From the NCBI RefSeq assembly GCF_039654945.1, contig NW_027361840.1:8742001-8806000 (forward strand): 64,000 nt of DNA, given 5' to 3'. How positions within the stretch are numbered: the first letter of the stretch is position 1; the number at the start of each line of letters is the position of its first letter. Shown piece by piece: positions 1 to 13,819 of this stretch. Origin of the DNA: Dendrobates tinctorius. Taxonomy: Eukaryota. Both the position numbers and the translations under genes were made by a program. The notes under the pieces were generated by a model. It was not told the origin of the DNA. It ran no database searches and worked only from the letters and a program-made list of their open reading frames with translations.

Positions 1-1287
1 CTTTGACCAGCTTTTCCATGTCCTCCGTTGGGAAACATGGACGGCCGCCTATATCGCTGTCCGAGGAGGATTCTGAGGACTGAGCAGAGGAAGAGGAGGT
101 TGAGGGGGACAAGGATCTATCCCGCCCCTTCTGCCTTGGCGAGGCCTCTGAATCGGAGCTCCTTCTATTATCTTTCTTTTTAAGGGCTGCCTTTAGAGAA
201 CCTTTCACCTCCTGTTGTATTAACTCTTTAAGGCTAGTCACCAAATCAGGGGTCTCCTCCTGCATAGTTTTGTTTATACAGTCAGCGCAGAGGTCTTTCT
301 GCCACTGATCTGCTAGCGGGTGTTTGCAAAGGGCGCATTCTCTATTCTTGGTTTTGCTGCTAGCCTTCCTCGACCCCTAGTGATCAAACAGAGAAAATGG
401 AACCCCGTTACCATAAGGGTGACATTCACGTAGATCACTCACCACCGCTGTCAATCAGGGGTACCGATCTCGGAGGCTCCTCAGATGCACTCGTGACGTT
501 TCTCCTGGATGTCTCAGAGTCATGCCGGTTGCGTTTATGACTGACGCTCCCACCAATCGAGCGACTGCTCCTAGCATGCTGGCGGCTCGGCCTGGCATCT
601 GGCGAGAGGTCTTGCTGCTGACGCTGCTGTTGCTGACGCTGCTCATCTTGCCCCACTTCCATCATGAAGCCTTGGGCATGAGTGCGTCTTCTGTGGTCAT
701 CCCCCTTATGTAAGGGGGATCCACTGCACTCTCCGCCTCCTCCGGTTACCCCCACAGCCCTCCCCCCTCCTGCCATGCCGCCGGGATCTCCTTTCGCCGG
801 CCGGCGTTGTTTGCTATGGGTGCCGCCATCTTGGATCACCGGCGCCGCCTCCCAATGCCACGCGGGCACGCCCCTTTCCCAGCGTGCCCTGCGTGTGACG
901 TCAGAGGTGCGCGACCCAGAAACGGCCGCTCCCTGACGCTCCTGCGCTGCTTCTGGACGCGGCAGAGGGGGAGAGGGCGGCGCGGCAGCCACGGCAGAGC
1001 CCCAGGACCCCAGCCGTGCTGCTTCTGTGCCCGCTCGGACGCTGAGCCCCCGGGGGACCCGCGGACGGCGCTTCCCCCTCCCGACACACAGCGCTCAGGA
1101 ACCAGCCTGATCTTCCACGCCGGCACGAGAGAGGGGCATGTATGTGATCTTCAGAACACGGGTCCCTGTCAGGACAGGAAACCCAACTGAAGCGGGAGAG
1201 GTACCGCCCCTTTTATCTTCAGTAGGGTTCCTGTCCTGACTGGGTGGATCCCCTCTCTCATGTGTGCCGTCATGGGAGACGGGAAAA
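1..1287 (-). mobile_element. 5' portion of a DIRS-like (tyrosine-recombinase) retrotransposon inserted into the Gypsy pol
   Basis: Minus strand 376->1 is open (GSRKASSKTKNRECALCKHPLADQWQKDLCADCINK...), with a CxxC-x11-CxxC motif followed by coiled/Ser-rich sequence like DIRS ORF1/gag. There is an inverted repeat at 1168-1190 / 1219-1240. The terminus reads TTTTCCCGTCTCCCATGAC on the minus strand at 1287, where Gypsy pol homology starts abruptly. Family assignment is from resemblance, not a search. Confidence 0.65.
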
Positions 1288-4226
1288 CTTTGCTGGCCCA
1301 AATGCTGCGAAAAGGAGTGATACGGGAAAGTCAAAGCCCCTGGGCGGCCCCAATCGTGTTGGTCCGGAAGAAAAATGGTACACTACGATTCTGTGTGGAT
1401 TATCGTAAACTGAATGCTTGCACTATTAAAGACTCATACCCACTGCCCCGCATAGAAGAATCCCTGTCTGCCTTGGGGAAGGCAACATATTTTTCGACCC
1501 TGGACTTGGCCAGTGGGTACTGGCAGGTGCCCATGTCAGAAGAAGATAGAGCCAAGACGGCGTTCATAATGCCCATGGGACTGTTTGAGTTTTATCGGAT
1601 GCCATTCGGGCTGGCCAATGCCCCCGGGACCTTTCAGTGATTGATGGAGCGATGTCTATGGGATCTCAATTTTAAGGCCACGTTGATCTACCTGGACGAC
1701 ATCATTGTCTATGCCGCCACCTTCGAGGACCACCTGAAGCGGTTGGGACAGGTACTCAGCCGGTTGCAAAAGTACGGGTTGAAGGTGAAGCCTCAGAAAT
1801 GCCACCTATTTTGCTCTCAGATTGAGTATCTGGGTCATGTCGTTTCGGCAGAGGGTGTGAGGCCATCCCGAGAGAAGGTTGCTGCTATCCAGGAATGGCC
1901 TACCCCCGAGACGGTGAAAGATGTGTGGGCTTTTCTGGGGTTGGCCGGATATTACCGTTGCTTCGTAAAGAATTTTGCATGTCGAGCTCGAGCCTTGCAC
2001 GACCTGCTGAAGGGGACTCCCGCTGGGGCCAATGGGCGAAGAATCCAGTGGCAACACCCTCAAGAAGAGGCCTTCCGAGACCTCAAGGCTGCGCTTTCGG
2101 ATGCCCCAGTGTTGGCTTTTGCGGATTTCTCCCAACCGTTCATCTTGCACACTGACGGGAGTCTTCACGATCTGGGGGCTGTGTTGTCACAGGTTCAGGA
2201 TGGCCAGGAGAGGGTGATCACATATGGAAGTCGCTCACTCCATGACTCCGAGCGTAACCCTGACAATAACAGCTCCTTTAAGCTCGAGCTCCTCGCAGTG
2301 GTGTGGGCTATGACGGAGAGATTCGCAGAGTACCTAGCGGGCTCCGAGGTGGTAGTGCGAACTGACAACAACCCGCTGGCTCATTTGGAACACGCCAAAT
2401 TGGGGGCTCTGGAACAGCGACGGGTGGCCCGGATGGCGAAGTACAATTATAAGATTATCTACAAAAGAGGGGTCGAGAATGTCCATGAAGACGCCCTCTC
2501 CAGAATTCAACATACAACTCCAGGACGGAATCGAGACGAAGAATTAGAAGGAGAGGAAATACCGTTCGCTCTCACTGCTGCCGTGCTCACAACTGACAAT
2601 AAAAAAATATCTTCCTCTGAGACCCCGAGGGGCATACTGGAACAATCCCGGGATAAGTGGATACAACAGCAACAAGAAGACGAAGAGGTTGGCCTTCTCA
2701 GGACATGGGTCGCCGCTGGGCAATTACCCCCTGACTTTCAACGGCAAAATTTGACTCAAGACCTGTTGCTTATGCTGCGACAATGGGAGAGGTTGGTTAT
2801 CCGAAATGGATTATTGTATCGTAAAATAACATCACAAACAACCTCAATGACGGTTTTGCAGGTGGTTACGCCAGGAGCCCAACTTCACGTACTGGCTCGG
2901 GAGGCTCACAAAAAAGGGGCCCATTTCGGAACAAAAAAAACTTTGCAATGGCTGCACCCGCGCTTGCCGGCTGTTGTGGACGAAATTTGCCGGACCTGCC
3001 GCTTGTGTGAATTAGCCAAACCACCCGCTCAGCGAGCCGCAACACAGACTATTGTGACCTCAGCGCCCCTTGAGCTCCTGACGGTGGATTATCTGACCAT
3101 TGGGCCTGCATTTCAGGGATACGAACACTGCCTCGTCATGGTGGATCACTTCACCAAGTTCGCTGTGGTCACCCCCACTCGGGATCAGACTGCAGAGTCA
3201 GCTGCCTCCGCAATTTGTAGAAACTTTATACAAATATACGGCTGTCCTCAACGAATACATTCTGATCAGGGAGCATGTTTTTTGGGAAAAGTCATGGAAG
3301 AACTACATCACCTCTATGGAACTGACAAATCCCGGACCACACCGTATCACCCGCAAGGGAATGGGGCTTGTGAACGATTTAATCAGACATTGATTCAGAT
3401 GTTGCGCACTCTGGAGAGTGACAAGAAGGCCCGTTGACCCGAATATGTTTCTGAATTAGTTTGGGTTTATAACAATAGGGTACATCGAGTGACTGGCTAT
3501 ACCCCCTATTCCCTGTTGTTCGGACGAGAAGGTAAAGGGATCACGGAGGTGGAGTTAGACCCCAAAGAACCTCAGCCCTGGACTGGAGTGTCGTCTTGGG
3601 TCCAAAATCATCGCCACCGGCTGCAAACTCTTCACCGAATTGTACACACCAAGCTCCGAGACTGGGAGCACCCAGGGAAGAATGCAACCCCAGCTCCTCA
3701 CCTCCAAAGCGGGGACCGGGTGCTTGTACTAGATCAACGCCCCCAGAACAAACTGGAGCCGCGTTGGGAAGAAAGTCCTTATCGGGTCTTACGCCGTATC
3801 CATACAGACGGACCGGTGTACGAAATACGACCTGAGGAGGATGAAACACTGCCCACTCGTATTGTGCATCGTAATATGTTACGCCCATGTACTTCCTCCG
3901 ACCCGAAGCAACCGGAGCCTACCCCGTCGACATCCGAACCGTCTTCCATATGTTGGGACCCGGACGACGACGAAGATTGTCTCCCAGGACACAGAGGCCC
4001 TCCACTCAGTAATGAATCATATGACACAATTAGCCCGCCCGCACCAATCAGCCCACCGATGTCCACCACCCCAGACGACTCTGCCCCAGTTGAACTTAGA
4101 CGCTCCAAGCGGTCAACAGCCGGCAAACCCCCTGAACGATATGAGCAAGATCAATTCATATGGCAACGAACATTGAAACCCCTACAGACCGATCTCAATA
4201 GACTAAGGCCCTCGCCCGAGGACTGA
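1288..4226 (+). pseudogene. Ty3/Gypsy pol (RT-RNase H-integrase), disabled by two in-frame stops
   Basis: RT motifs SPWAAPIVLVRKK, CVDYRKLN, MPFGL, YLDD; RNase H LHTDGS...TDNNPL; integrase VDY...HSDQG...YHPQGNGACERFN. One frame, broken by TGA at 1638-1640 (expected CGA/Arg) and at 3435-3437 (expected TGG/Trp). Confidence 0.95.
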
Positions 4227-4247
4227 TGAGCTTACAGGGTGGGGGAG

Positions 4248-5354
4248 TGTGGGGAGGAGGACTCCCAGACAGTGACCGGGCAGGTACCCAGGGGACCGCC
4301 ATCAGGGTTCCTAAGGGAACGATACTGGGAGGACATTAAAGGGAGAGACTTGACTAAAGTTGTCAGGGAAACGGGGCGGGGCAAGGATAAAAGGAGCAGG
4401 GGGCGCGCTGAAGTGGCAGTTGGGAGAGAGTGTGACAGGAGTCAGGAAGCCGGGTGACTTGGAGGGACACCGACAGGAGCCTGTGAGGAGGATACTGCGC
4501 ACTCACCGACAAGGGAGACGTGAGAGACTTTTACCGGAGGCCACTTCCCGCCCCCGTTCGCAGAGAATCACGCCCGCCGCCCCCTGCCTTTGTGAGACTG
4601 ATCCCTTACCTCAGGTCGCAGCTGTGACTACACGTAAACCGGCCACAGAGGCCTGGACACTGCCCCCCGGCCTTCTCCCACCGCAGCAACCCTATAATCA
4701 TCGGCCTCAGGGGACACCACCTCGTCCTAGGCGACATTAGAGTCCCATTTCCCGGCTGTGGAGGGACCCTTATCAGAGGACAGCTACTGGTCATTTGGGG
4801 AACTGCGCTATTACCGCGCCCCACCGACATCGTTTCTTCAGGGCCTGTTGCGCCCCACCATCATCGTTTCTTCAGGGCCTGTTGCGCCCCACCAGCATTG
4901 TTTCTTCAGGGCCTGTTGCGCCCCACCGACATTGTTTCTTCAGAGCCTGCTGCGCCCCACCGGCATCGTTCTTTCAGGGCCTGTTGCGCCCCCACCGACA
5001 TCGTTTCTTCAGGGCCTGTTGCGCCCCACCGCCTTCGTTTCTTCAGGGCCTGTTGTGCCCCACCGGCATCATTTCTTGAGGGCCTGTCGAGCCCAAATCT
5101 TCCCGGGATATCGAGGCGTCAAGACAGCCGCATCAACAGCCACGTTCTGGCTTTCTACACCCGGACTAGCTGGGTACTCCCAGTTTCCTTAGAAAAGTAT
5201 TGTTTGTTTTATTGAGTCCCTGCGAGGACAGATGTGTTTACCCCTTTCTGCCTGTTCAGCATGGCCCTAGGGGCTCCCATTTATAAAAGTTGATTATACA
5301 AGTTATACCCTGTCTCGTGTCTCGTCACTGCATCCTGAGAATCTGCTGGTCACA
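4248..5354 (+). mobile_element. 3' LTR of the Gypsy element (about 1.1 kb)
   Basis: A polypurine tract AGGGTGGGGGAG (4236-4247) directly after pol is followed by TGTGG. The putative end is ...GGTCACA at 5354. The partner LTR is outside the window, so the 3' edge is inferred. Confidence 0.75.
4820..5085. repeat. 34-bp tandem repeat inside the LTR (about 8 copies)
   Basis: Unit CATCGTTTCTTCAGGGCCTGTTGCGCCCCACCGA recurs at 4828, 4862, 4896 and onward. Confidence 0.9.
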
Positions 5355-5410
5355 ACATGAGTGTCGGTGGTCTCCACAGTATCCCCCCTTTTATACATTC
5401 TTGGACATAC

Positions 5411-5548
5411 CGGATCCAGTGCCGCCACACAGGCTGTGCAGCATCACCGCGCCGCTGTAACAATCCCGCCTCTCCACCTCTCTCCGGACAGCCTCCATGG
5501 TTCTGTGCAGCAGACTCTCCTCCGCGCTGCTCGTAATCTCCTGGTATC
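5411..5548 (-). CDS. Zeta (cryptic)-tubulin-like gene, coding exon 4
   Basis: tag|...|gtatgt, 138 nt, phase 1-1. Encodes (G)YQEITSSAEESLLHRTMEAVRREVERRDCYSGAVMLHSLCGGTGS(G), which carries the tubulin signature GGTGSG. Confidence 0.92.
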
Positions 5549-5829
5549 CTATTAATCAAGTGGAGAACGGCAACATGAGTGATGGCGGAGCTATATTATA
5601 GACACTACGTGGCCACACACATGGCAGCGGGCCCTGGGCCGTCCTGTGCGTAGCCCCTGCTCTGGACGGCTCCTTCTGCAAAACCCTGAGATGAGGGCTA
5701 CACAACAACGTGAGTCTCTGGCATCAGAGGTGATGATTCTCCATGGTGCCACATTGGGAACTTCGTCCTACGGTAACTGCAGGACTCTGTCCCATATACT
5801 TCACTGCATGTCACATGCGACCACAGCTC

Positions 5830-6250
5830 CATGACACATGCATGATGCAACTGTGCTACAGCGTGCTGCAACTGCTACAATGTGCGACAACTGTGCTACA
5901 GCGTGCTGCAACTGCTACAATGTGCGACAACAGTGCTACAGCGTGCTGCAACTGCTACAGCGTATTGCCACTGTGCTATAGAATGCATCAACTGCTACAA
6001 CGTACAACTGTGCTACAGAGTGCTGCAACTGCTAAAACGTGCAGCAACTGTGCCACAACGTGCTGTACCTGCTACAGTGTGCTTCTACTGTGTTACAACG
6101 TGCGGCAACTGTGCTACAACTTGCGAGAACTGCTACGACAGCGTGCTGCAACTGTGCTACAGAGTGCTGCAACTGCTACAACTATGCTACAACGTGCGGC
6201 AACTGTGCTACAACGTGCGGCAACTGTGCTACAACGTGCGGCAACTCCTA
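5830..6250. repeat. Irregular minisatellite (GTGCTACA/GCAACT motifs) in a tubulin intron
   Basis: Repeating tgtgctacagcgtgctgcaactgctacaa variants; this explains the Cys/Ala/Thr ORFs in three frames. Confidence 0.85.
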
Positions 6251-6294
6251 TAACTTGCCGTATACAGTACACAGCACCCCTGCCATCTTCTTAC

Positions 6295-6356
6295 CATACG
6301 CCCAGTTGTTGCCTCTTCCTCTCTGTCCCACGATGACATTGGAGTCTCTGAAGTAT
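6295..6356 (-). CDS. Zeta-tubulin-like gene, coding exon 3
   Basis: ttcag|...|gtaaga, 62 nt, phase 2-1. Encodes YFRDSNVIVGQRGRGNNWAY(G), the tubulin GxGNNWAxG motif. Confidence 0.92.
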
Positions 6357-7471
6357 CTGAATGAGAAGACACAAACGTTAGTCACAGCTGGACGAGGGTC
6401 GCGGTGCAGACCCCGGTGAGGACACCAGGGAGGGGGCTGCAGCATGGAGGCAGTGACGTCTGACGGTAATTATACCCCCACTTGGTGGGGATTTCCCCCC
6501 TTAGTGGGCTGTCCTAGTAAAGGTCTACGGAGGCGATATAGGGAGAGACGCCATTCTGGGCTGATTGCTGTATAACAAGTGACCTCCTCTGAGAACATAA
6601 GATGAGGACGCACTCGCCCCACAGCAACAATCAGAGCCGCTGAGCCCAGTGATTGGCTGCAGCAGTGATGCATGCTGCAACACGTCATCACCGCTGCAGC
6701 CAACACAAAGAGAGCAGACAAGGGAGGGCGAGTGCCGTTGTTATTTTACATGGTTGCCGGTGCTTGGGGTCCAGTGTAATTAACATGGGAAACCTCTCCT
6801 AGGGGCTGTCTATAGCCCCTTACTGCTGTGGCGCAGACGTCCGTCATGCTGATTCTATCGGGTATTGGTTCTGCATCCGTGCGATTAGCTGTCACTGATC
6901 AGCGAGCACACAGATCCCTACAGCTTAACCCTTCACATGCTGCAGTCAGTAGCGACTGCGCCGTCAGGTTCGCTATAGAAAAGGCGGAAGCCCACCGGCT
7001 GCATCTGATAATCACTGCAATGCAAAGGTATTAAATGGGGGATCGGGACCATTCAAGAACAAGTACCCAAGATGGACTACAATAAGATAAGAAAAAAGAA
7101 ATTATATAAAAGTAGGAAAATATAAAAATATCAAAATTTGGCATCGCTATGATTGAACTGACCCAGTTACCTTATCACGTATCCCGCACAGTAAACACTG
7201 CAAAAAAAATGCAGAATTGCTGTTTTCTCCCCATTCAGTCCATGAGAAAATATTAAATGTTTTTCAACACATTAGATCTTCCCAGAAATTATTCCATTAC
7301 ATTAGAATTTGTGCAGCAAACAAAAAACACTCGTGGCATCAGCTGATGAGTAATAAAAAACTAAAATAGCTGTGTCCTTTTAAGGGTGAACTTTACTGTT
7401 GCAATAGTATACACACCCAGGTACAGCTCCCCAGACCCCCGGTGATCAGCCATCGTGGGAACCCTACTTAC

Positions 7472-7567
7472 CCCCTCTTCACTTGCTGGCGGAGTTTTCG
7501 GATAACTTTAGGTTCTGTGTCCACACAGATGGCGTTAATGAATCCATCACGTGAGAAATACGGATAC
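7472..7567 (-). CDS. Zeta-tubulin-like gene, coding exon 2
   Basis: ctcacag|...|gtaagt, 96 nt, phase 2-2. Encodes YPYFSRDGFINAICVDTEPKVIRKLRQQVKR(G), the tubulin VDxEP motif. Confidence 0.92.
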
Positions 7568-7959
7568 CTGTGAGAGATGAGAATGCAGCACGCTCAGCTC
7601 ATCCGTACATGTGATCATTGGCAGCCGCTCCGCTTCAGAGCCGGAAGACCCCTCAGAAAATGGTCGAGGGGTAGGACAATATGGGATACGATGACTAAAT
7701 ACCTTTGGTCTGAAACGCGTCTGCCAGTGTGAACTCTCCTCTATAGGGTTAGTGGCTACTATGCTGTTATAATGGATTTTAAAAAATTTCAATAAACATT
7801 CATTTTATGGGATTTCTGCAGCTGGATCCTTTTTTCTTCACTCACCTGAAGACCCCTTCTCCCATAAATCAGCGGATACCATTAGGGGGCCACGGCCATT
7901 CTATTCCCTTAAAAGAGACTTACTGGAAAAAAACAGGCACAAGATGGTGGCCATCTTAC

Positions 7960-8054
7960 CGGTCAGCGTCGGCGAGGTTGCTACTGAGGATTTGCCACCA
8001 TTCCTGTCCGATCTGGTTGCCACATTGTCCAACCTGGAGCCAGATCAGCGACAT
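7960..8054 (-). CDS. Zeta-tubulin-like gene, first coding exon (exon begins at 8060, ATG at 8054)
   Basis: ttttttcccag|CTGGAAATG...CG|gtaaga. Encodes MSLIWLQVGQCGNQIGQEWWQILSSNLADAD(R), with the tubulin N-terminal GQCGNQIG motif. Confidence 0.93.
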
Positions 8055-8222
8055 TTCCAGCTGGGAAAAAAATGGATTAATTCTCACAGATTTTGGGGGT
8101 AAATGGATTAAAAACGGTAAAATTTTGATGTGTCAATATCGAATACTCAAGATTGCTGGACGGGCAACAGAACAGGAACATGAAGGAAGCATGCCAAATA
8201 TACAAAGGGTTTTCTACAGCCT

Positions 8223-11070
8223 TTAACCCCTTCAAGCTCTATGACATATCTGTAGCGGGCTCAAGATCCTTCATAGACAGCCAGCATCTGCCGGTAACAG
8301 CAATGAGCGAGCATTTAAGTCAGGGGCACACCAACATAACCGTGATGTACTGATAGGTTGTCGTGAGCTTGGGGACCTACTGGCGTCTTCCATGGCAGGT
8401 GTGGACGTACTGACGGTTTCCACGGCAGCTGAGAGCCTACTGACGGCTTCCACGGCAGCTGGAGACCTACTGACGGCTTCCACCGCAGCTGGAGACCTAC
8501 TGACGGCTTCCACGGCAGCTGGAGACCTACTGACGGCTTCCACGGCAGCTGGAGACCTACTGACGGCTTCCACGGCAGCTGGAGACCTACTGACGGCTTC
8601 CACGGCAGCTGGAGACCTACTGACGGCTTCCACGGCAGCTGGAGACCTACTGACGGCTTCCACGGCAGCTGGAGACCTACTGACGGCTTCCACGGCAGCT
8701 GGAGACCTACTGACGGCTTCCACGGCAGCTGGAGACCTACTGACGGCTTCCACGGCAGCTGGAGACCTACTGACGGCTTCCACGGCAGCTGGAGACCTAC
8801 TGACGGCTTCCACGGCAGCTGGAGACCTACTGACGGCTTCCACGGCAGCTGGAGACCTACTGACGGCTTCCACGGCAGCTGGAGACCTACTGACGGCTTC
8901 CACGGCAGCTGGAGACCTACTGACGGCTTCCACGGCAGCTGGAGACCTACTGACGGCTTCCACGGCAGCTGGAGACCTACTGACGGCTTCCACGGCAGCT
9001 GGAGTCCTACTGACGGCTTCCACGGCAGCTGGAGACCTACTGACGGCTTCCACGGCAGCTGGAGTCCTACTGACTGCTTCCACGGCAGCTGGAGTCCTAC
9101 TGACTGCTTCCACGGCAGCTGGAGACCTAATGGCGGCTTCCACGGCAGCTGGAGACCTACTGGCGGCTTCCACGGCAGCTGGAGACCTACTGGCGGCTTC
9201 CACGGCAGCTGGAGACCTACTGGCGGCTTCCAAGGCAGCTGGAGACCTACTGGCGGCTTCCACGGCAGCTGGAGACCTACTGGCGGCTTCCACGGCAGCT
9301 GGAGACCTACTGGCGGCTTCCACGGCAGCTGGAGACCTACTGGCGGCTTCCACGGCAGCTGGAGACCTAATGGCGGCTTCCACGGCAGCTGGGGACCTAA
9401 TGGAGCTTCCACGGCAGCTGGGGACCTACTGACGGCTTCCACGGCAGCTGGAGACCTAATGGCGGCTTCCACGGCAGCTGGAGACCTAATGGCGGCTTCC
9501 ACGGCAGCTGGAGACCTAATGGCGGCTTCCACGGCAGCTGGAGACCTAATGGCGGCTTCCACGGCAGCTGGAGACCTACTGGCGGCTTCCACGGCAGCTG
9601 GAGACCTACTGGCGGCTTCCACGGCAGCTGGAGACCTACTGGCGGCTTCCACGGCAGCTGGAGACCTACTGGCGGCTTCCACGGCAGCTGGAGACCTACT
9701 GGCGGCTTCCACGGCAGCTGGAGACCTACTGGCGGCTTCCACGGCAGCTGGAGACCTACTGGCGGCTTCCACGGCAGCTGGAGACCTACTGGCGGCTTCC
9801 ACGGCAGCTGGAGACCTACTGGCGGCTTCCACGGCAGCTGGAGACCTACTGGCGGCTTCCACGGCAGCTGGAGACCTACTGGCGGCTTCCACGGCAGCTG
9901 GAGACCTACTGGCGGCTTCCACGGCAGCTGGAGACCTACTGGCGGCTTCCACGGCAGCTGGAGACCTACTGGCGGCTTCCACGGCAGCTGGAGACCTACT
10001 GGCGGCTTCCACGGCAGCTGGAGACCTACTGGCGGCTTCCACGGCAGCTGGAGACCTACTGGCGGCTTCCACGGCAGCTGGAGACCTACTGGCGGCTTCC
10101 AAGGCAGCTGGAGACCTACTGGCGGCTTCCAAGGCACCTGGAGACCTACTGGCGGCTTCCACGGCAGCTGGAGACCTAATGGCTGCTTCCACGGCAGCTG
10201 GTGACCTAATGGCGGCTTCCACGGCAGCTGGGGACCTAATGGAGCTTCCACGGCAGCTGGAGACCTACTGACGGCTTCCACGGCAGCTGGAGACCTAATG
10301 GCGGCTTCCACGGCAGCTGGAGACCTAATGGCGGCTTCCACGGCAGCTGGAGACCTAATGGCGGCTTCCACGGCAGCTGGTGACCTAATGGCTGCTTCCA
10401 CGGCAGCTGGTGACCTAATGGCGACTTCCACGGCAGCTGGAGACCTACTGATGGCTTTCACGGCAACTGGGGACCTACTGACGACTTCCACAGCAGCTGG
10501 AGACCTACTAATGGCTTCCACGGCAGTTGGAGACCTAATGACGGCTTCCATGGCAGCTGGGGATTTACTGGCGGCTTCCATGGCAGCTGGGAATTTACTG
10601 GCGGCTTCCATGGCAGCCATCTTGGGCCTGCTGTGAAGCTGCAGGCTGAACTCCATAGAAGGCTGCGTACTGCAGGGTCCAGAACAGATGACCGCAGAAT
10701 CCAGTCCCCTATGGGGTCTAAAATAAAGTCAAATACAAAAAAAAAGAAAGAAAGGAAAAGGTTTTTGCTGTTAATCGCTGTTCTTTGCTCAGCGCAGCCA
10801 CCTCCACCCAAAAAAAAAGTAAAAGGCGACCGGAATGCTCTATGCGCCACGCGGAGGACGCGCCTCGCAGAAACACATTTTTTCACCATCACATTAGGAA
10901 TTGTTTCCTCTTTCTCGGTACATTATATGGTAAAACTGAAGCAGCCATTCACAACTATGACACTTCCTACAAAAGTGAAAAACAACAACAGGCCTCATGA
11001 GGCGAGAGAGGGAAAAGGAAAGAGGTCCTGGCTTCAAAAACGGAAGTTGTCTGTGTCCTTCAGCAGTTAA
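8223..11070. mobile_element. Degenerate TTAA-type (piggyBac-like) non-autonomous element hosting the 30-bp array
   Basis: Starts TTAACCCCTT at about 8223. The right end (...gtccttcagcagttaa) resembles the ...aaggggttaa ends of the copies at 36106 and 40118. Confidence 0.4.
8372..10618. repeat. 30-bp tandem array (about 75 copies) in tubulin intron 1
   Basis: Unit GGAGACCTACTG(A/G)CGGCTTCCACGGCAGCT; homogeneous core, degenerate edges, two 29-bp units. Confidence 0.98.
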
Positions 11071-11130
11071 TAATTATCAATTTATTTACGCTAAAAACCA
11101 CTGGACACAATAAGTTAATGTTATTGATAA

Positions 11131-11448
11131 GTTTCCCATAGCAACCAATCATATTTCCATCAATGGCTGCTGTCACACCTGCTTCTGTATTGTATAAATA
11201 AAGTTTATTGAAAGACAGACAATGGAGTCCATAGCAACCAATCAAAACATGTCTTTCATTCCGTATTCTTCAACGGCAGCAGAAGAGCTGGATTCGGATT
11301 GGTTGCTGTATGCGGGCGCTGTACTAACTTTCATTGTGTATAAATAAAGTTTATGGAAATTATTCGCGACCAATCAGTACGCTTCTTACATTTTCTAACT
11401 GAAGGGAAAAATATATGAGCTGGCATCTGATTGGTTGCCATAGGTAAC
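11131..11448. promoter_or_regulatory. RFX X-box-like motifs coupled to CCAAT boxes
   Basis: GTTGCCATAGGTAAC (11434-11448) fits GTNRCC-N0-3-RGYAAC; GTTTCCCATAGCAAC (11131-11145) is a near match. Both have an adjacent CCAAT/ATTGG. Confidence 0.45.
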
Positions 11449-11479
11449 AGGACTAGCTCTGAATAACATCGGGGCTGTG

Positions 11480-11930
11480 TGAGGCCCGGTTGGCGGCCAC
11501 GGAGCCCCGAGAGTCGTGCGCTCACCTGTGTGCGGGGCCGTGCGCTGTCCTCGCCGCTGGGGGTGCAGTCTCCTCCCCTCCCCGTGTTACAGTTGTGACT
11601 GGAGGAAGTGGACGAGTTTGCGCCATTTCCGCTCCGTGTTCTGGGGAGGAGGAGCCGATCAGCCGGAGGCCGCAGAGCCGCGATCCTGCCGGGAAACCTT
11701 GCACCTTCCTCCGGCCTAGACTGGTAACTTGTCCCCGTCGTGTCTGCGGCCCTAACAACTCCGGACAAGCCGCGGCCTGTGGTAAGCGCGCAGCCCGAAA
11801 CACTCTCCAAGTAGGCGGCCTTCCTAGAAAGCGGGAGCCGGGGACGCACAGGAGTGAGAGGCCGGAGGGAGAGCAGCGGCATCATGGCCTGAGAGCGGAG
11901 GACGGAGCCGCCGCCGCCATTGTCCATCCT
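11480..11930. promoter_or_regulatory. CpG-rich bidirectional promoter with putative non-coding first exons of the tubulin gene (-) and setd2 (+)
   Basis: Non-repetitive CpG-dense patch. Minus-strand donor CAG|GTGAGC at 11526/11525; plus-strand donors CTG|GTAACT (11724) and GTG|GTAAGC (11782). ETS GGAAGT at 11604-11609 and YY1-like CGCCATTT at 11621-11628 lie between them. Both first coding exons are preceded by splice acceptors, which implies upstream UTR exons. Confidence 0.7.
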
Positions 11931-11979
11931 GTCTGCAGCCCAGAATCACTGCTGAAAGGGGGAAGCCCTGCTAAAGACC

Positions 11980-12950
11980 GTGCACCCGCGGAGTCACTGC
12001 ACGCCAGTCTCTGCACCCCCAGAGTCACTGCACCCCCGGATTCACTGCACCCCAGGTCTGTGCACCCCCCGGATTCACTGCACCCCTGGTCTCTGCACCC
12101 CCGAAGTCTCTGCACCCCCGGTCTGTGCACCCCCGGTCTGTGCACCCCCGGTCTGTGCACCCCCGGTCTGTGCACCCCCGAAGTCTCTGCCCCCCGGTGT
12201 CTCTGCACCCCCGAAGTCTGTGCACCCCCGGTCTGTGCACCCCCGAAGTCTCTGCACCCCCGGTCTGTGCACCCCCGAAGTCTCTGCACCCCAGGTCTGT
12301 GCACCCCCGAAGTCTCTGCACCCCAGGTCTGTGCACCCCCGAAGTCTCTGCACCCCCGAAGTCTCTGCACCCCCGAAGTCTCTGCACCCCCGAAGTCTCT
12401 GCACCCCCGAAGTCTCTGCACCCCCGAAGTCTCTGCACCCCCAGAGTCACTGCACCCCCAGATTCTCTGCACCCCCGAAGTCTCTGCACCCCAGGTCTCT
12501 GCACCCCCGAAGTCTCTGCACCCCAGGTCTGTGCACCCCCGAAGTCTCTGCACCCCAGGTCTGTGCACCCCCGAAGTCTCTGCACCCCAGGTCTGTGCAC
12601 CTCCGAAGTCTCTGCACCCCAGGTCTGTGCACCACCCCCAGAGTCACTGCACCCCCAGGCCTGTGCACCACCCCGAAGTCACTACATGCTCAGGTCTGTG
12701 CAACACCCAAAGACACTGCACCCCAGTTCCGTGCTCCCCCAAAATCACTGCTGGAAGGGAGAAGCTCTACTAACGTCGCTGCACCCCAGAGTTACTGCTG
12801 CAATGGGGAAGCCCTGCTAGAGTCTGTGCACCGCACCCCAAAGTCACCACCAGCCAATGAGAGGGAAGCCCTGCTAAAGTCTGCACCCCCAAATCACTGG
12901 TGGAACGAGATAAACTCCTTCTGAAATCTGCACCCCCAAAGTCAAGGACT
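11980..12950. repeat. 16-17-bp minisatellite in the first setd2 intron
   Basis: Unit GTCTCTGCACCCCCGAA / GTCTGTGCACCCCCG, decaying towards about 13.2 kb. Confidence 0.95.
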
Positions 12951-13784
12951 GATGAGAGGGGAGACTTGCTGGAGACTGCACCTCAGGTCAGTGCATTCCC
13001 AAAATCCCTGGAGCCGTGCTGAAATCTGCACCCAAAGTCTCTGTTCCCCAAAACCACTGCTGAAAGCAGCGCCCTGCTGAAAAGTCTGCACCCCAAATCT
13101 GTGCACTGTCACCAGCGGCTGATGGAAGGAGAGGGAGGCTGCACCCTAAAATCACTGATGGAAGGAGGGGATCTCTATTGAGCAACACTTCTGCACCATA
13201 ATATCTAGGAAAATCTATTGTGCCCCCCAAAGTCATCAGGACCTTTGTCAGATTGTAGTTGAGGGCCTTGAACACAAATCTTTAGGGAACCCTGCTGTGT
13301 GCACCCTGATATCAGGAATTAATCCTTTTGTAAGCACCTTAATATCTGGAACTCCTTCACCCCGATACCTTAAAGCTGTTTGCAGTTCGCTGCGCTCAGT
13401 CTCTAGAGGCTCTCTGTGTGCACCCTAATATTTGCCATTGATAAGGACTTCTTCACTCTCTTGAAGCTTCAGCATCCCTCTGAAGGTGTTTTTCCTGCAC
13501 CCACCCAGTCTGAGGATATGTGAGCCCCCCCAATATCTGGAGATAACATTATCTGGAGCTCCTTCACCCCAATATCTTTGGATCATCTTATCTGGAGTTA
13601 TTTTCTGCGTGAACCCCAATATTTGACATTGACGACGTCTCTAGGATCTGTTCTCCCTCTGGATCCCTGTTTCCAGGGGTGTCCGGTGATTGACCCATTT
13701 GAAGTCCTCCTTTCCTGCACCCCGTCTCTCTGGAGTCGCTCCCCCACCTCTCCACAGGCTGGATGCCTTGCTCCACCACTGACA

Positions 13785-13819
13785 ATGGGGGATTTCTATG
13801 ATCCTGAACACCCAACTGA
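13785..13819 (+). CDS. setd2: SETD2 first coding exon (exon 13758-13819)
   Basis: ccacag| at 13757. ACAATGG in strong Kozak context encodes MGDFYDPEHPT(E), matching the vertebrate SETD2 N-terminus; donor GA|gtaagt. Confidence 0.92.

What the first reader, a model, noticed from the sequence alone, without database searches (positions are those of the whole stretch)
5411..8060. Hidden zeta(cryptic)-tubulin-like gene assembled from four small minus-strand exons
Seen: four GT-AG exons (95+96+62+138 coding nt) with matching phases splice to MSLIWLQVGQCGNQIGQEWWQILSSNLADADRYPYFSRDGFINAICVDTEPKVIRKLRQQVKRGYFRDSNVIVGQRGRGNNWAYGYQEITSSAEESLLHRTMEAVRREVERRDCYSGAVMLHSLCGGTGSG with no stop. Known: these are tubulin GTP-binding motifs; the sequence is not alpha, beta or gamma and diverges strongly from delta as I recall it. 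Zeta-tubulin belongs to the delta/epsilon/zeta centriolar module, is present in frogs and is lost in placental mammals. Inference: this is zeta-tubulin, a gene easily mis-annotated as delta-like.
Basis: partly seen in the sequence, partly recalled or inferred. Interest (0 to 1): 0.8.

Follow-up and report, generated by a model that had tools for sequence, protein, structure and literature searches.

The report
Poison-frog zeta-tubulin gene, first exons
The four small exons are real and are spliced in RNA. They encode the start of the frog's zeta-tubulin, a known centriole and basal-body tubulin that public annotation already lists under the misleading name "tubulin delta chain-like", so the find is correct but ordinary.

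Summary
Observation confirmed. Four minus-strand GT-AG exons (8054-7960, 7567-7472, 6356-6295, 5548-5411) give 391 nt and 130 codons without a stop. All three junctions occur exactly in assembled contigs of three public runs from two organisms.

Interpretation supported.
- The peptide matches residues 137-266 of RefSeq XP_073407275.1, "tubulin delta chain-like" of Dendrobates tinctorius, at 130 of 130 positions. Window 1-21927 is 100% identical to that assembly.
- It is 74-75% identical to Xenopus zeta-tubulin. The X. laevis protein is named "zeta tubulin L homeolog".
- In a maximum-likelihood tree it lies in the zeta clade (100/98), apart from true TUBD1 (100/97) and epsilon (100/94). An AU test rejects a grouping with delta (p 0.0002).
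- Exon structure matches X. tropicalis zeta. The divergent SETD2 neighbour is the same in both frogs, and KIF9 lies downstream as in a marsupial.

- The gene is not hidden. It has a full public gene model that is only misnamed.
- A 5' exon lies at about 11927-11526.
- Coding exons 5-10 lie 9.6-13.6 kb beyond the left edge of the window, past a 15-kb intron that holds a gypsy-type retroelement remnant.

Zeta-tubulin in frogs has been described since 2015, so this is already known and of low interest. Another first-stage note on this same window (s1-369573) covers the tubulin-SETD2 pair.

The parts
11526..11927 (-). 5' exon of the gene. The public model reads it as 134 extra N-terminal codons, but it is more likely 5' UTR. 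The donor GT is at 11525-11524. The transcription start was not determined.
   Evidence: The loose end of the X2 contig beyond 8063 maps to 11529-11558 with one mismatch. The sequence shows CAG|GTGAGC at 11526|11525. Residues 1-134 of XP_073407275.1 map here.
8061..11525 (-). Intron between the 5' exon and the first coding exon. It holds a 30-bp minisatellite at 8370-10617.
   Evidence: The junction 11526|8060 follows from the contigs. Tandem Repeats Finder reports 75 copies with 95% matches.
7960..8060 (-). First coding exon. The acceptor AG is at 8062-8061 and the conserved start codon is at 8054-8052. It encodes MSLIWLQVGQCGNQIG..., which includes the T1 GTP-binding loop GQCGNQ.
   Evidence: The junction 7960|7567 is seen in X1 and X2. 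Nearly all orthologues from sharks to marsupials align from their residue 1 here.
7472..7567 (-). Coding exon 2 (96 nt).
   Evidence: Both of its junctions are seen in contigs of X1 and X2; X17 shows its junction to exon 3 (6356|7472) but keeps intron 1.
6295..6356 (-). Coding exon 3 (62 nt). It encodes ...GQRGRGNNWAYG, with the GNNWA motif.
   Evidence: Both junctions are seen in X1, X2 and X17.
5411..5548 (-). Coding exon 4 (138 nt). It ends in the T4 tubulin signature GGTGSG. The donor GT is at 5410-5409.
   Evidence: The contigs run on about 500 nt into exon 5, reading GSG-LGSRLCEEIR.
1..5410 (-). First 5.4 kb of the roughly 15-kb intron 4. Exon 5 is not in the window; it lies 9.56 kb to the left of position 1.
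   Evidence: The 30-mer of exon 5 is absent from the window. It is found at L001 31489, which corresponds to window coordinate -9561.
1260..4226 (+). Remnant of a Ty3/gypsy-type retroelement pol gene (reverse transcriptase, RNase H, integrase). It lies inside intron 4, antisense to the gene, and is not part of the gene.
   Evidence: ORFs. Pfam RT_RNaseH_2, rve, RVT_1 and Integrase_H2C2 match.

Best explanation
The region holds the 5' exon and the first four coding exons of the single-copy zeta-tubulin gene of the dyeing poison frog Dendrobates tinctorius. This gene is the orthologue of Xenopus tubz1.

Shown here:
- They encode the N-terminal nucleotide-binding part of a tubulin-fold protein: the T1 loop GQCGNQ, the GNNWA motif and the T4 signature GGTGSG.
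- The gene continues through six more coding exons left of the window, to a core protein of 422 residues.
- The gene lies head-to-head with SETD2 and tail-to-tail with KIF9.

Inferred from orthology and from published work on Xenopus:
- The protein is one of the three delta/epsilon/zeta centriolar tubulins.
- It binds GTP like other tubulins.
- In cycling cells it is cytoplasmic, associated with the TRiC/CCT chaperonin.

The public name 'tubulin delta chain-like' is an artefact of automatic naming.
For: - Exons, phases and open frame.
- Pfam Tubulin on exons 1 and 4.
- Exact junctions in contigs of three runs from two organisms, with 0 differences in organism A. The contigs continue into exon 5 and into a 5' exon.
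- The peptide is 130/130 identical to XP_073407275.1 (D. tinctorius), 125-126/130 to Ranitomeya, 98/130 to X. laevis NP_001082326.1 'zeta tubulin L homeolog' and 96/130 to X. tropicalis 'Zeta tubulin' A0A803JL53.
- Window 1-21927 is 100% identical to GCA_039654945.1 contig JAYMGB010000185.1. All 11 exons of the model are found there.
- X. tropicalis zeta has the same ten coding exons, with matching boundaries at residues 32, 64/65, 85, 131 and 239/240.
- Synteny: SETD2 (SET, AWS, WW, SRI) is the divergent upstream neighbour in both frogs, and KIF9 is the convergent downstream neighbour in D. tinctorius and in a possum.
- Tree of 51 rows: zeta clade 100/98, delta clade with Pongo TUBD1 100/97, epsilon 100/94. 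The peptide lies inside an anuran clade (100/100) and the branching follows the species tree. Gracilinanus has one protein in each of the delta and zeta clades, and two Centroberyx species supply one each.
- AU test: holding the peptide with delta costs 64.4 log-likelihood units, p 0.000245, with the dendrobatid rows left out.
- Family range: sharks, ray-finned fishes, lungfish, coelacanth, amphibians, reptiles and marsupials. No placental mammal or bird is among the 120 best hits. That matches the published range of zeta (PMC4202323).
- Function in Xenopus: PMC4741028 and PMC11156431, both citing Turk et al. 2015.
Against: - Nothing found contradicts the assignment.
- The run kinds are only guessed as RNA. 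However, exact GT-AG removal in the contigs is hard to explain otherwise.
- Contigs cannot give expression level, tissue or transcript start.
- Some contigs keep intron 1, which gives a stop at once (CGG TAA), so part of the RNA is unspliced or non-productive.
- The delta and epsilon rows in the tree are N-terminal fragments or short isoforms of at most about 350 residues. No frog TUBD1 row was available.
- Function was not tested in this species.
- The primary paper (Turk et al. 2015) could not be read here.
Confidence: 0.95

Rival explanations
1. It is the frog's delta-tubulin (TUBD1), as the public name 'tubulin delta chain-like' suggests.
For: Automatic names from NCBI and UniProt say so. 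The nearest Atlas cluster is named 'Tubulin delta chain'. Delta is the nearest paralogue family, and delta plus zeta together have 99/95 support.
Against: True TUBD1 proteins (Pongo TUBD1, rat, rabbit, platypus, hummingbird, fish) form their own clade at 100/97, apart from the clade that holds the peptide at 100/98. The AU test gives p 0.000245. A marsupial carries both a TUBD1 and a member of this family. No placental mammal is among the 120 best relatives, although placentals have TUBD1. The 45-residue exon-4 search found only zeta-type proteins among the hits whose sequences were read (42 of 56), apart from two beta-type sequences (P0015, P0018) and three not recognisable as tubulin (P0007, P0016, P0054), and no delta among them.
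Confidence: 0.02
2. It is a decaying or unexpressed relic: a pseudogene fragment with only its N-terminal exons left.
For: The window holds only four coding exons and then a retroelement. Exon 5 is absent from the window. Some contigs keep intron 1.
Against: Spliced contigs continue about 500 nt into downstream exons. All remaining exons lie intact 9.6-13.6 kb further on in the same contig, and the model is full length. The peptide shows 96-97% identity to Ranitomeya and 85% to Bufo, with all motifs kept.
Confidence: 0.02
3. It is a lineage-specific extra copy (paralogue) of zeta-tubulin, not the orthologue of Xenopus tubz1.
For: Only one window of a very large genome was read, so other copies cannot be excluded from here.
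Against: It has the same SETD2 neighbour and orientation as X. tropicalis zeta, and the same KIF9 neighbour as in a possum. The tree follows the species tree with one row per species. Published surveys found no species with duplicated delta, epsilon or zeta tubulins (PMC4202323).
Confidence: 0.03

Closest known systems
Xenopus zeta-tubulin (tubz1; X. laevis NP_001082326.1 'zeta tubulin L homeolog'; X. tropicalis A0A803JL53)
   Same: It is the orthologue. Identity over the 130 residues is 74-75%. Both start at MS..W, have ten coding exons with matching boundaries and have SETD2 as the divergent neighbour. They share the anuran clade in the tree.
   Different: It comes from another frog family (Dendrobatidae). 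The introns are far longer: the gene spans 25.5 kb against 13.4 kb, and intron 4 is about 15 kb with a retroelement. Function has not been studied in this species.
RefSeq XP_073407275.1 'tubulin delta chain-like' [Dendrobates tinctorius], and its Ranitomeya counterparts XP_069585251.1, XP_077123992.1 and XP_077123993.1
   Same: It is the same gene: 130/130 identity and the same genomic DNA.
   Different: The D. tinctorius model adds 136 N-terminal residues, 134 from the 5' exon and two from the start of the first coding exon. These are not conserved in frame among frogs. The name points to the wrong subfamily.
Delta-tubulin (TUBD1)
   Same: It is the nearest paralogue family. The tubulin fold and the motifs GQCGNQIG, GNNWAxGY and GGTGSG are shared, and both belong to the delta/epsilon/zeta centriolar module (PMC4202323, PMC11156431).
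   Different: It forms a separate clade (100/97 against 100/98). The two delta fragments found with the peptide (P0259, P0266) are 33-39% identical to it over this region. Delta is present in placental mammals, whereas this family is not seen there. Delta is needed for triplet microtubules, whereas zeta is linked to appendages (PMC11156431).
Epsilon-tubulin (TUBE1)
   Same: It is a third member of the same co-conserved module and has the tubulin fold.
   Different: It is the outgroup to delta plus zeta (100/94 for epsilon, 99/95 for delta plus zeta). Identity to the peptide is 26-35%.

Membership tests
Tubulin superfamily (Pfam PF00091) | Tubulin/FtsZ GTPase domain with the T1 loop GQCGNQ and the T4 signature GGTGSG | tested here: met
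   Pfam matches exons 1 and 4. The motifs are read directly in the translation. The full-length protein of the same gene matches PDB beta-tubulins over residues 3-417 at E 4e-32.
Zeta-tubulin (TUBZ1) | Falls in the zeta clade, apart from delta and epsilon, in a phylogeny of the superfamily | tested here: met
   zeta 100/98, delta 100/97 and epsilon 100/94, with the peptide inside the zeta clade; a grouping with delta is rejected by the AU test (p 0.000245). The AU test against epsilon did not finish.
Zeta-tubulin (TUBZ1) | Orthology to the experimentally studied Xenopus zeta-tubulin | tested here: met
   Identity is 98/130 to NP_001082326.1. That protein shares a 90% cluster with the X. tropicalis protein. 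The SETD2 neighbour is the same, the exon boundaries match and both lie in the anuran clade at 100/100.
Zeta-tubulin (TUBZ1) | Phyletic pattern: kept in marsupials, reptiles, amphibians and fishes, absent from placental mammals | tested here: met
   The 120 best relatives include seven marsupials and many reptiles, amphibians and fishes, but no placental mammal. This agrees with PMC4202323. Absence was judged from the listed hits only.
Zeta-tubulin (TUBZ1) | Intact, transcribed, full-length gene | tested here: met
   Spliced contigs occur in three runs. All exons are present and open in the assembly. Exons 5-10 lie outside the window.
Zeta-tubulin (TUBZ1) | Localisation at the basal foot of multiciliated cells and association with TRiC/CCT | not testable with these tools
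   Known for Xenopus only, from literature (PMC4741028, PMC11156431).
Delta-tubulin (TUBD1) | Clusters with TUBD1 orthologues | tested here: not met
Epsilon-tubulin (TUBE1) | Clusters with TUBE1 orthologues | tested here: not met
   In the tree, epsilon is the outgroup to delta plus zeta. The AU test was not finished.

The most novel reading that the evidence does not exclude
The divergent SETD2 and zeta-tubulin pair is seen in two distant frogs. In this window the zeta 5' exon lies at most 1.9 kb from the SETD2 start codon. The pair might be a conserved bidirectional unit that co-regulates a histone/tubulin methyltransferase with a centriolar tubulin. Separately, hyloid frogs might make an N-terminally extended zeta isoform from the 5' exon. 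Neither reading is excluded, and neither is supported beyond adjacency and an open frame.
Probability: 0.1. Interest if true: 0.35.

Novelty: already known. Interest (0 to 1): 0.12.

Why it matters
It matters little for discovery. Zeta-tubulin is a described family, known in frogs since 2015, and this gene already has a complete public model.

The practical value is in annotation.
- Automatic pipelines name zeta-tubulins "tubulin delta chain(-like)", "tubulin beta chain-like" or "uncharacterized" across vertebrates. Comparative studies of the delta/epsilon/zeta module that rely on names will therefore miscount delta and zeta.
- The case also shows that the D. tinctorius model probably carries a false N-terminal extension.
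- The locus lies between SETD2 and KIF9. From my own memory, these two genes are neighbours in human. If so, this marks where placental mammals lost the gene.

Tried and rejected
- PDB sequence searches with exon 4 and with the full-length Ranitomeya protein listed only beta-tubulins among the 60 hits shown. They therefore gave no help with the subfamily.
- The phmmer search of the 45-residue exon 4 against the 1.84 billion representatives gave 56 hits. Among the 42 whose sequences I read I recognised no delta. It served only to reach full-length relatives.
- The Atlas look-up gave cluster names without ids.
- Turk et al. 2015 (PMC4546511) is not held, so function rests on two reviews that cite it.
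- The shark protein has no locus on record.
- The turtle locus shows no called gene within 10 kb upstream.
- The 2933-residue divergent neighbour in gar has no Pfam record. My tblastn with window ORFs did not confirm it as SETD2, so the age of the SETD2 pairing beyond frogs stays open.
- The AU test of the peptide with epsilon did not finish in the time allowed.
- I did not type the 130-residue peptide into any tool. Once the identical stored protein was found, it was referenced as P0204:137-266.

Full report
**What is in the sequence**

On the minus strand, four segments each begin after an AG and end before a GT:
- 8054-7960 (95 nt from the ATG)
- 7567-7472 (96 nt)
- 6356-6295 (62 nt)
- 5548-5411 (138 nt)

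Joined, they give 391 nt. Pfam's Tubulin/FtsZ GTPase model matches exon 1 (profile positions 2-24) and exon 4 (positions 88-124) when each is scanned alone. The translation carries the T1 loop GQCGNQ, the GNNWA motif and the T4 signature GGTGSG.

**Transcript evidence**

I laid the assembled contigs of four public runs on 5300-8200.
- Runs X1 and X17 (organism A) have no differences from the window in the exons. Run X2 (organism B) has about 1-2% differences.
- All three contain contigs that skip exactly 5549-6294 and 6357-7471.
- X1 and X2 also skip 7568-7959.
- All skipped parts have GT..AG ends on the minus strand.
- Run X18 (organism C) covers the introns and looks like genomic DNA of a relative. 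It does not show these joints.

The spliced contigs run on for about 500 nt beyond 5411. Their first 30 letters there read GSG-LGSRLCEEIR in frame. That 30-mer is absent from the window, so exon 5 lies outside it.

At the other end the contigs continue past 8060 into letters that map to 11529-11558. The sequence there shows an exon ending CAG|GTGAGC at 11526|11525.

Some contigs keep intron 1 (X17 record 11, X1 record 5). That reading gives CGG TAA, an immediate stop, so these are unspliced or non-productive forms.

The run kinds are only guessed as RNA. Contigs say nothing about level, tissue or transcript ends.

**Which genome and which gene**

A phmmer search with the 45 residues of exon 4 reached full-length relatives. 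A word search with the shark member then listed 120 named relatives.

| Protein compared | Identity to the peptide |
|---|---|
| XP_073407275.1, 'tubulin delta chain-like' [Dendrobates tinctorius], residues 137-266 | 130/130 |
| Ranitomeya proteins | 125-126/130 |
| X. laevis NP_001082326.1, 'zeta tubulin L homeolog' | 98/130 |
| X. tropicalis entry that UniProt calls 'Zeta tubulin' | 96/130 |

Fetching the locus of XP_073407275.1 showed that window 1-21927 is 100% identical, in reverse, to contig JAYMGB010000185.1 of GCA_039654945.1. The window is therefore D. tinctorius, and the gene already has a public model.

That model maps as follows:
- a 5' exon at window 11927-11526
- the four exons of the finding
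- six further coding exons, 9.56-13.59 kb to the left of window position 1

Intron 4 is about 15 kb. Its part inside the window contains a Ty3/gypsy-type pol remnant on the opposite strand at 1260-4226.

**Zeta, delta or epsilon**

Names do not help. Nearly all members of this family are called 'tubulin delta chain(-like)', and some 'tubulin beta chain-like' or 'uncharacterized'.

To obtain true delta sequences I searched with the peptide itself, referenced as P0204:137-266. This turned up two short proteins that looked like delta to me. One of them, P0266, then retrieved proteins named TUBD1 or tubulin delta chain from orang-utan, rat, rabbit, platypus, a marsupial, a hummingbird and fishes.

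I built a careful maximum-likelihood tree of 51 rows (LG+C20+F+G4, beta and gamma as outgroup). Support is given as ultrafast bootstrap / SH-aLRT.

| Clade | Support |
|---|---|
| delta | 100/97 |
| epsilon | 100/94 |
| delta plus zeta | 99/95 |
| zeta | 100/98 |

- The zeta clade holds the window peptide, the X. laevis zeta tubulin, and members from a sponge, a sea anemone, an oomycete and an amoebozoan.
- Inside it the vertebrate rows follow the species tree. The peptide sits with D. tinctorius, then Ranitomeya, then Bufo, within an anuran clade at 100/100.
- The marsupial Gracilinanus has one protein in each of the delta and zeta clades, and two Centroberyx species supply one each, so the two families are paralogues.
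- With the three dendrobatid rows left out, forcing the peptide into the delta clade costs 64.4 log-likelihood units (AU p 0.000245). The same test for epsilon did not finish.

**Independent support for orthology**

- X. tropicalis zeta has ten coding exons, with boundaries at the same residues as the frog gene here.
- In both frogs the upstream neighbour, on the opposite strand, is a protein of about 2900 residues with AWS, SET, WW and SRI domains, that is SETD2.
- Downstream of the D. tinctorius gene, convergent, lies KIF9. The same is true for the zeta gene of a possum.
- The 120 best relatives include sharks, ray-finned fishes, coelacanth, lungfish, amphibians, turtles, lizards, a gharial and seven marsupials, but no placental mammal. 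This is the published range of zeta-tubulin (PMC4202323).

**How it most likely works**

Shown here: the gene is intact and spliced, and it encodes a tubulin-fold protein with the nucleotide-binding loops.

Inferred from orthology and literature: it belongs to the co-conserved delta/epsilon/zeta module found only in organisms with centrioles and cilia. In Xenopus multiciliated cells zeta-tubulin is a component of the basal foot. [quoted passage not shown] In cycling cells it is cytoplasmic, with the TRiC/CCT chaperonin (PMC4741028, PMC11156431, both citing Turk et al. 2015, which I could not read). None of this was tested in D. tinctorius.

**Corrections and side points**

- The public model starts at an ATG in the 5' exon (11927) and adds 136 residues before MSLIW.
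- Nearly all orthologues from sharks to marsupials align with the peptide from their residue 1, at MS.
- The extensions in other frog models are not alike, except for a short stretch, MAQT(H/R)PLPPVTTVTRGG. In D. tinctorius this starts at 11626 and is 107 nt from the main ATG in the spliced RNA, so it is out of frame with it (my reading).
- The extension is therefore more likely 5' UTR with an upstream ATG than coding sequence.
- The true 5' end of the gene is about 3.5-3.9 kb closer to SETD2 than the first coding exon. The SETD2 start codon is at 13785.

**Verdict**

The gene is neither hidden nor new. It is the annotated D. tinctorius orthologue of a described gene. Interest is low; the use is in correcting names and a probable false N-terminus.

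Noticed in passing
window 8370-10617 (annotated ORF 8271-10620, minus strand): A 30-bp minisatellite (75 copies, 95% matches) fills most of the intron between the 5' exon and the first coding exon. The GenBank annotation of the assembly calls a 753-residue product with no Pfam domain from it (L001 11308-13657). This is probably a spurious ORF made by the in-frame repeat.
   Followed up: partly
window 11526-11927, with an upstream ATG at 11626-11624: The RefSeq model's 136-residue N-terminal extension is not conserved among frogs. A short stretch, MAQT(H/R)PLPPVTTVTRGG, recurs in the Ranitomeya, Hyla and Bufo models. In D. tinctorius it is out of frame with the main ATG (107 nt apart in the spliced RNA). 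It is more likely a 5' UTR with an upstream ATG than coding sequence.
   Followed up: partly
window 7568-7959: Contigs of X17 (record 11) and X1 (record 5) keep intron 1 while other introns are removed. Read through, the frame stops at once (CGG TAA). These are unspliced precursors or a non-productive isoform.
   Followed up: no
window 1260-4226 (+): A Ty3/gypsy-type pol remnant (part of the reverse transcriptase, RNase H, integrase) is broken into at least three ORFs. It lies in intron 4, antisense to the tubulin gene.
   Followed up: partly
window 5846-6246: A 21/40-bp tandem repeat lies in intron 3. The relative in run X18 lacks 49 and 72 nt there, so the array varies in length between species or individuals.
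   Followed up: no
window 5300-5358, 6632-6703 and 7690-7800: Very high summed contig depth in the DNA run X18 (up to about 49,000), together with many loose ends, marks short dispersed repeats inside the introns.
   Followed up: no
window 11927-13785 and L001/L002/L003: The gene order SETD2 (divergent), zeta-tubulin, KIF9 (convergent) is seen in D. tinctorius. The SETD2 pairing is also seen in X. tropicalis, and the KIF9 pairing in a possum. G+C-rich 17/32-bp repeats at 11980-12751 lie between the two 5' ends. From my own memory, SETD2 and KIF9 are direct neighbours in human, which would mark the place of the loss in placental mammals.
   Followed up: partly
protein P0372 (UniProt A0A0K8RF30, 'Tubulin delta chain', Ixodes ricinus): In the tree this tick entry is sister to rat TUBD1, inside the placental mammals (97/90). 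It looks like host (rodent) contamination of a tick transcriptome.
   Followed up: no
proteins P0214-P0231: A set of unnamed ENA/Logan fragments begins MSTVFLHVGQCGNQLGQ.FWEE, carries a long Ser/Pro-rich insert before the first conserved block and ends in HSIAGGTGSG. They are zeta- or delta-like proteins of unknown organisms and were not placed in the tree.
   Followed up: no
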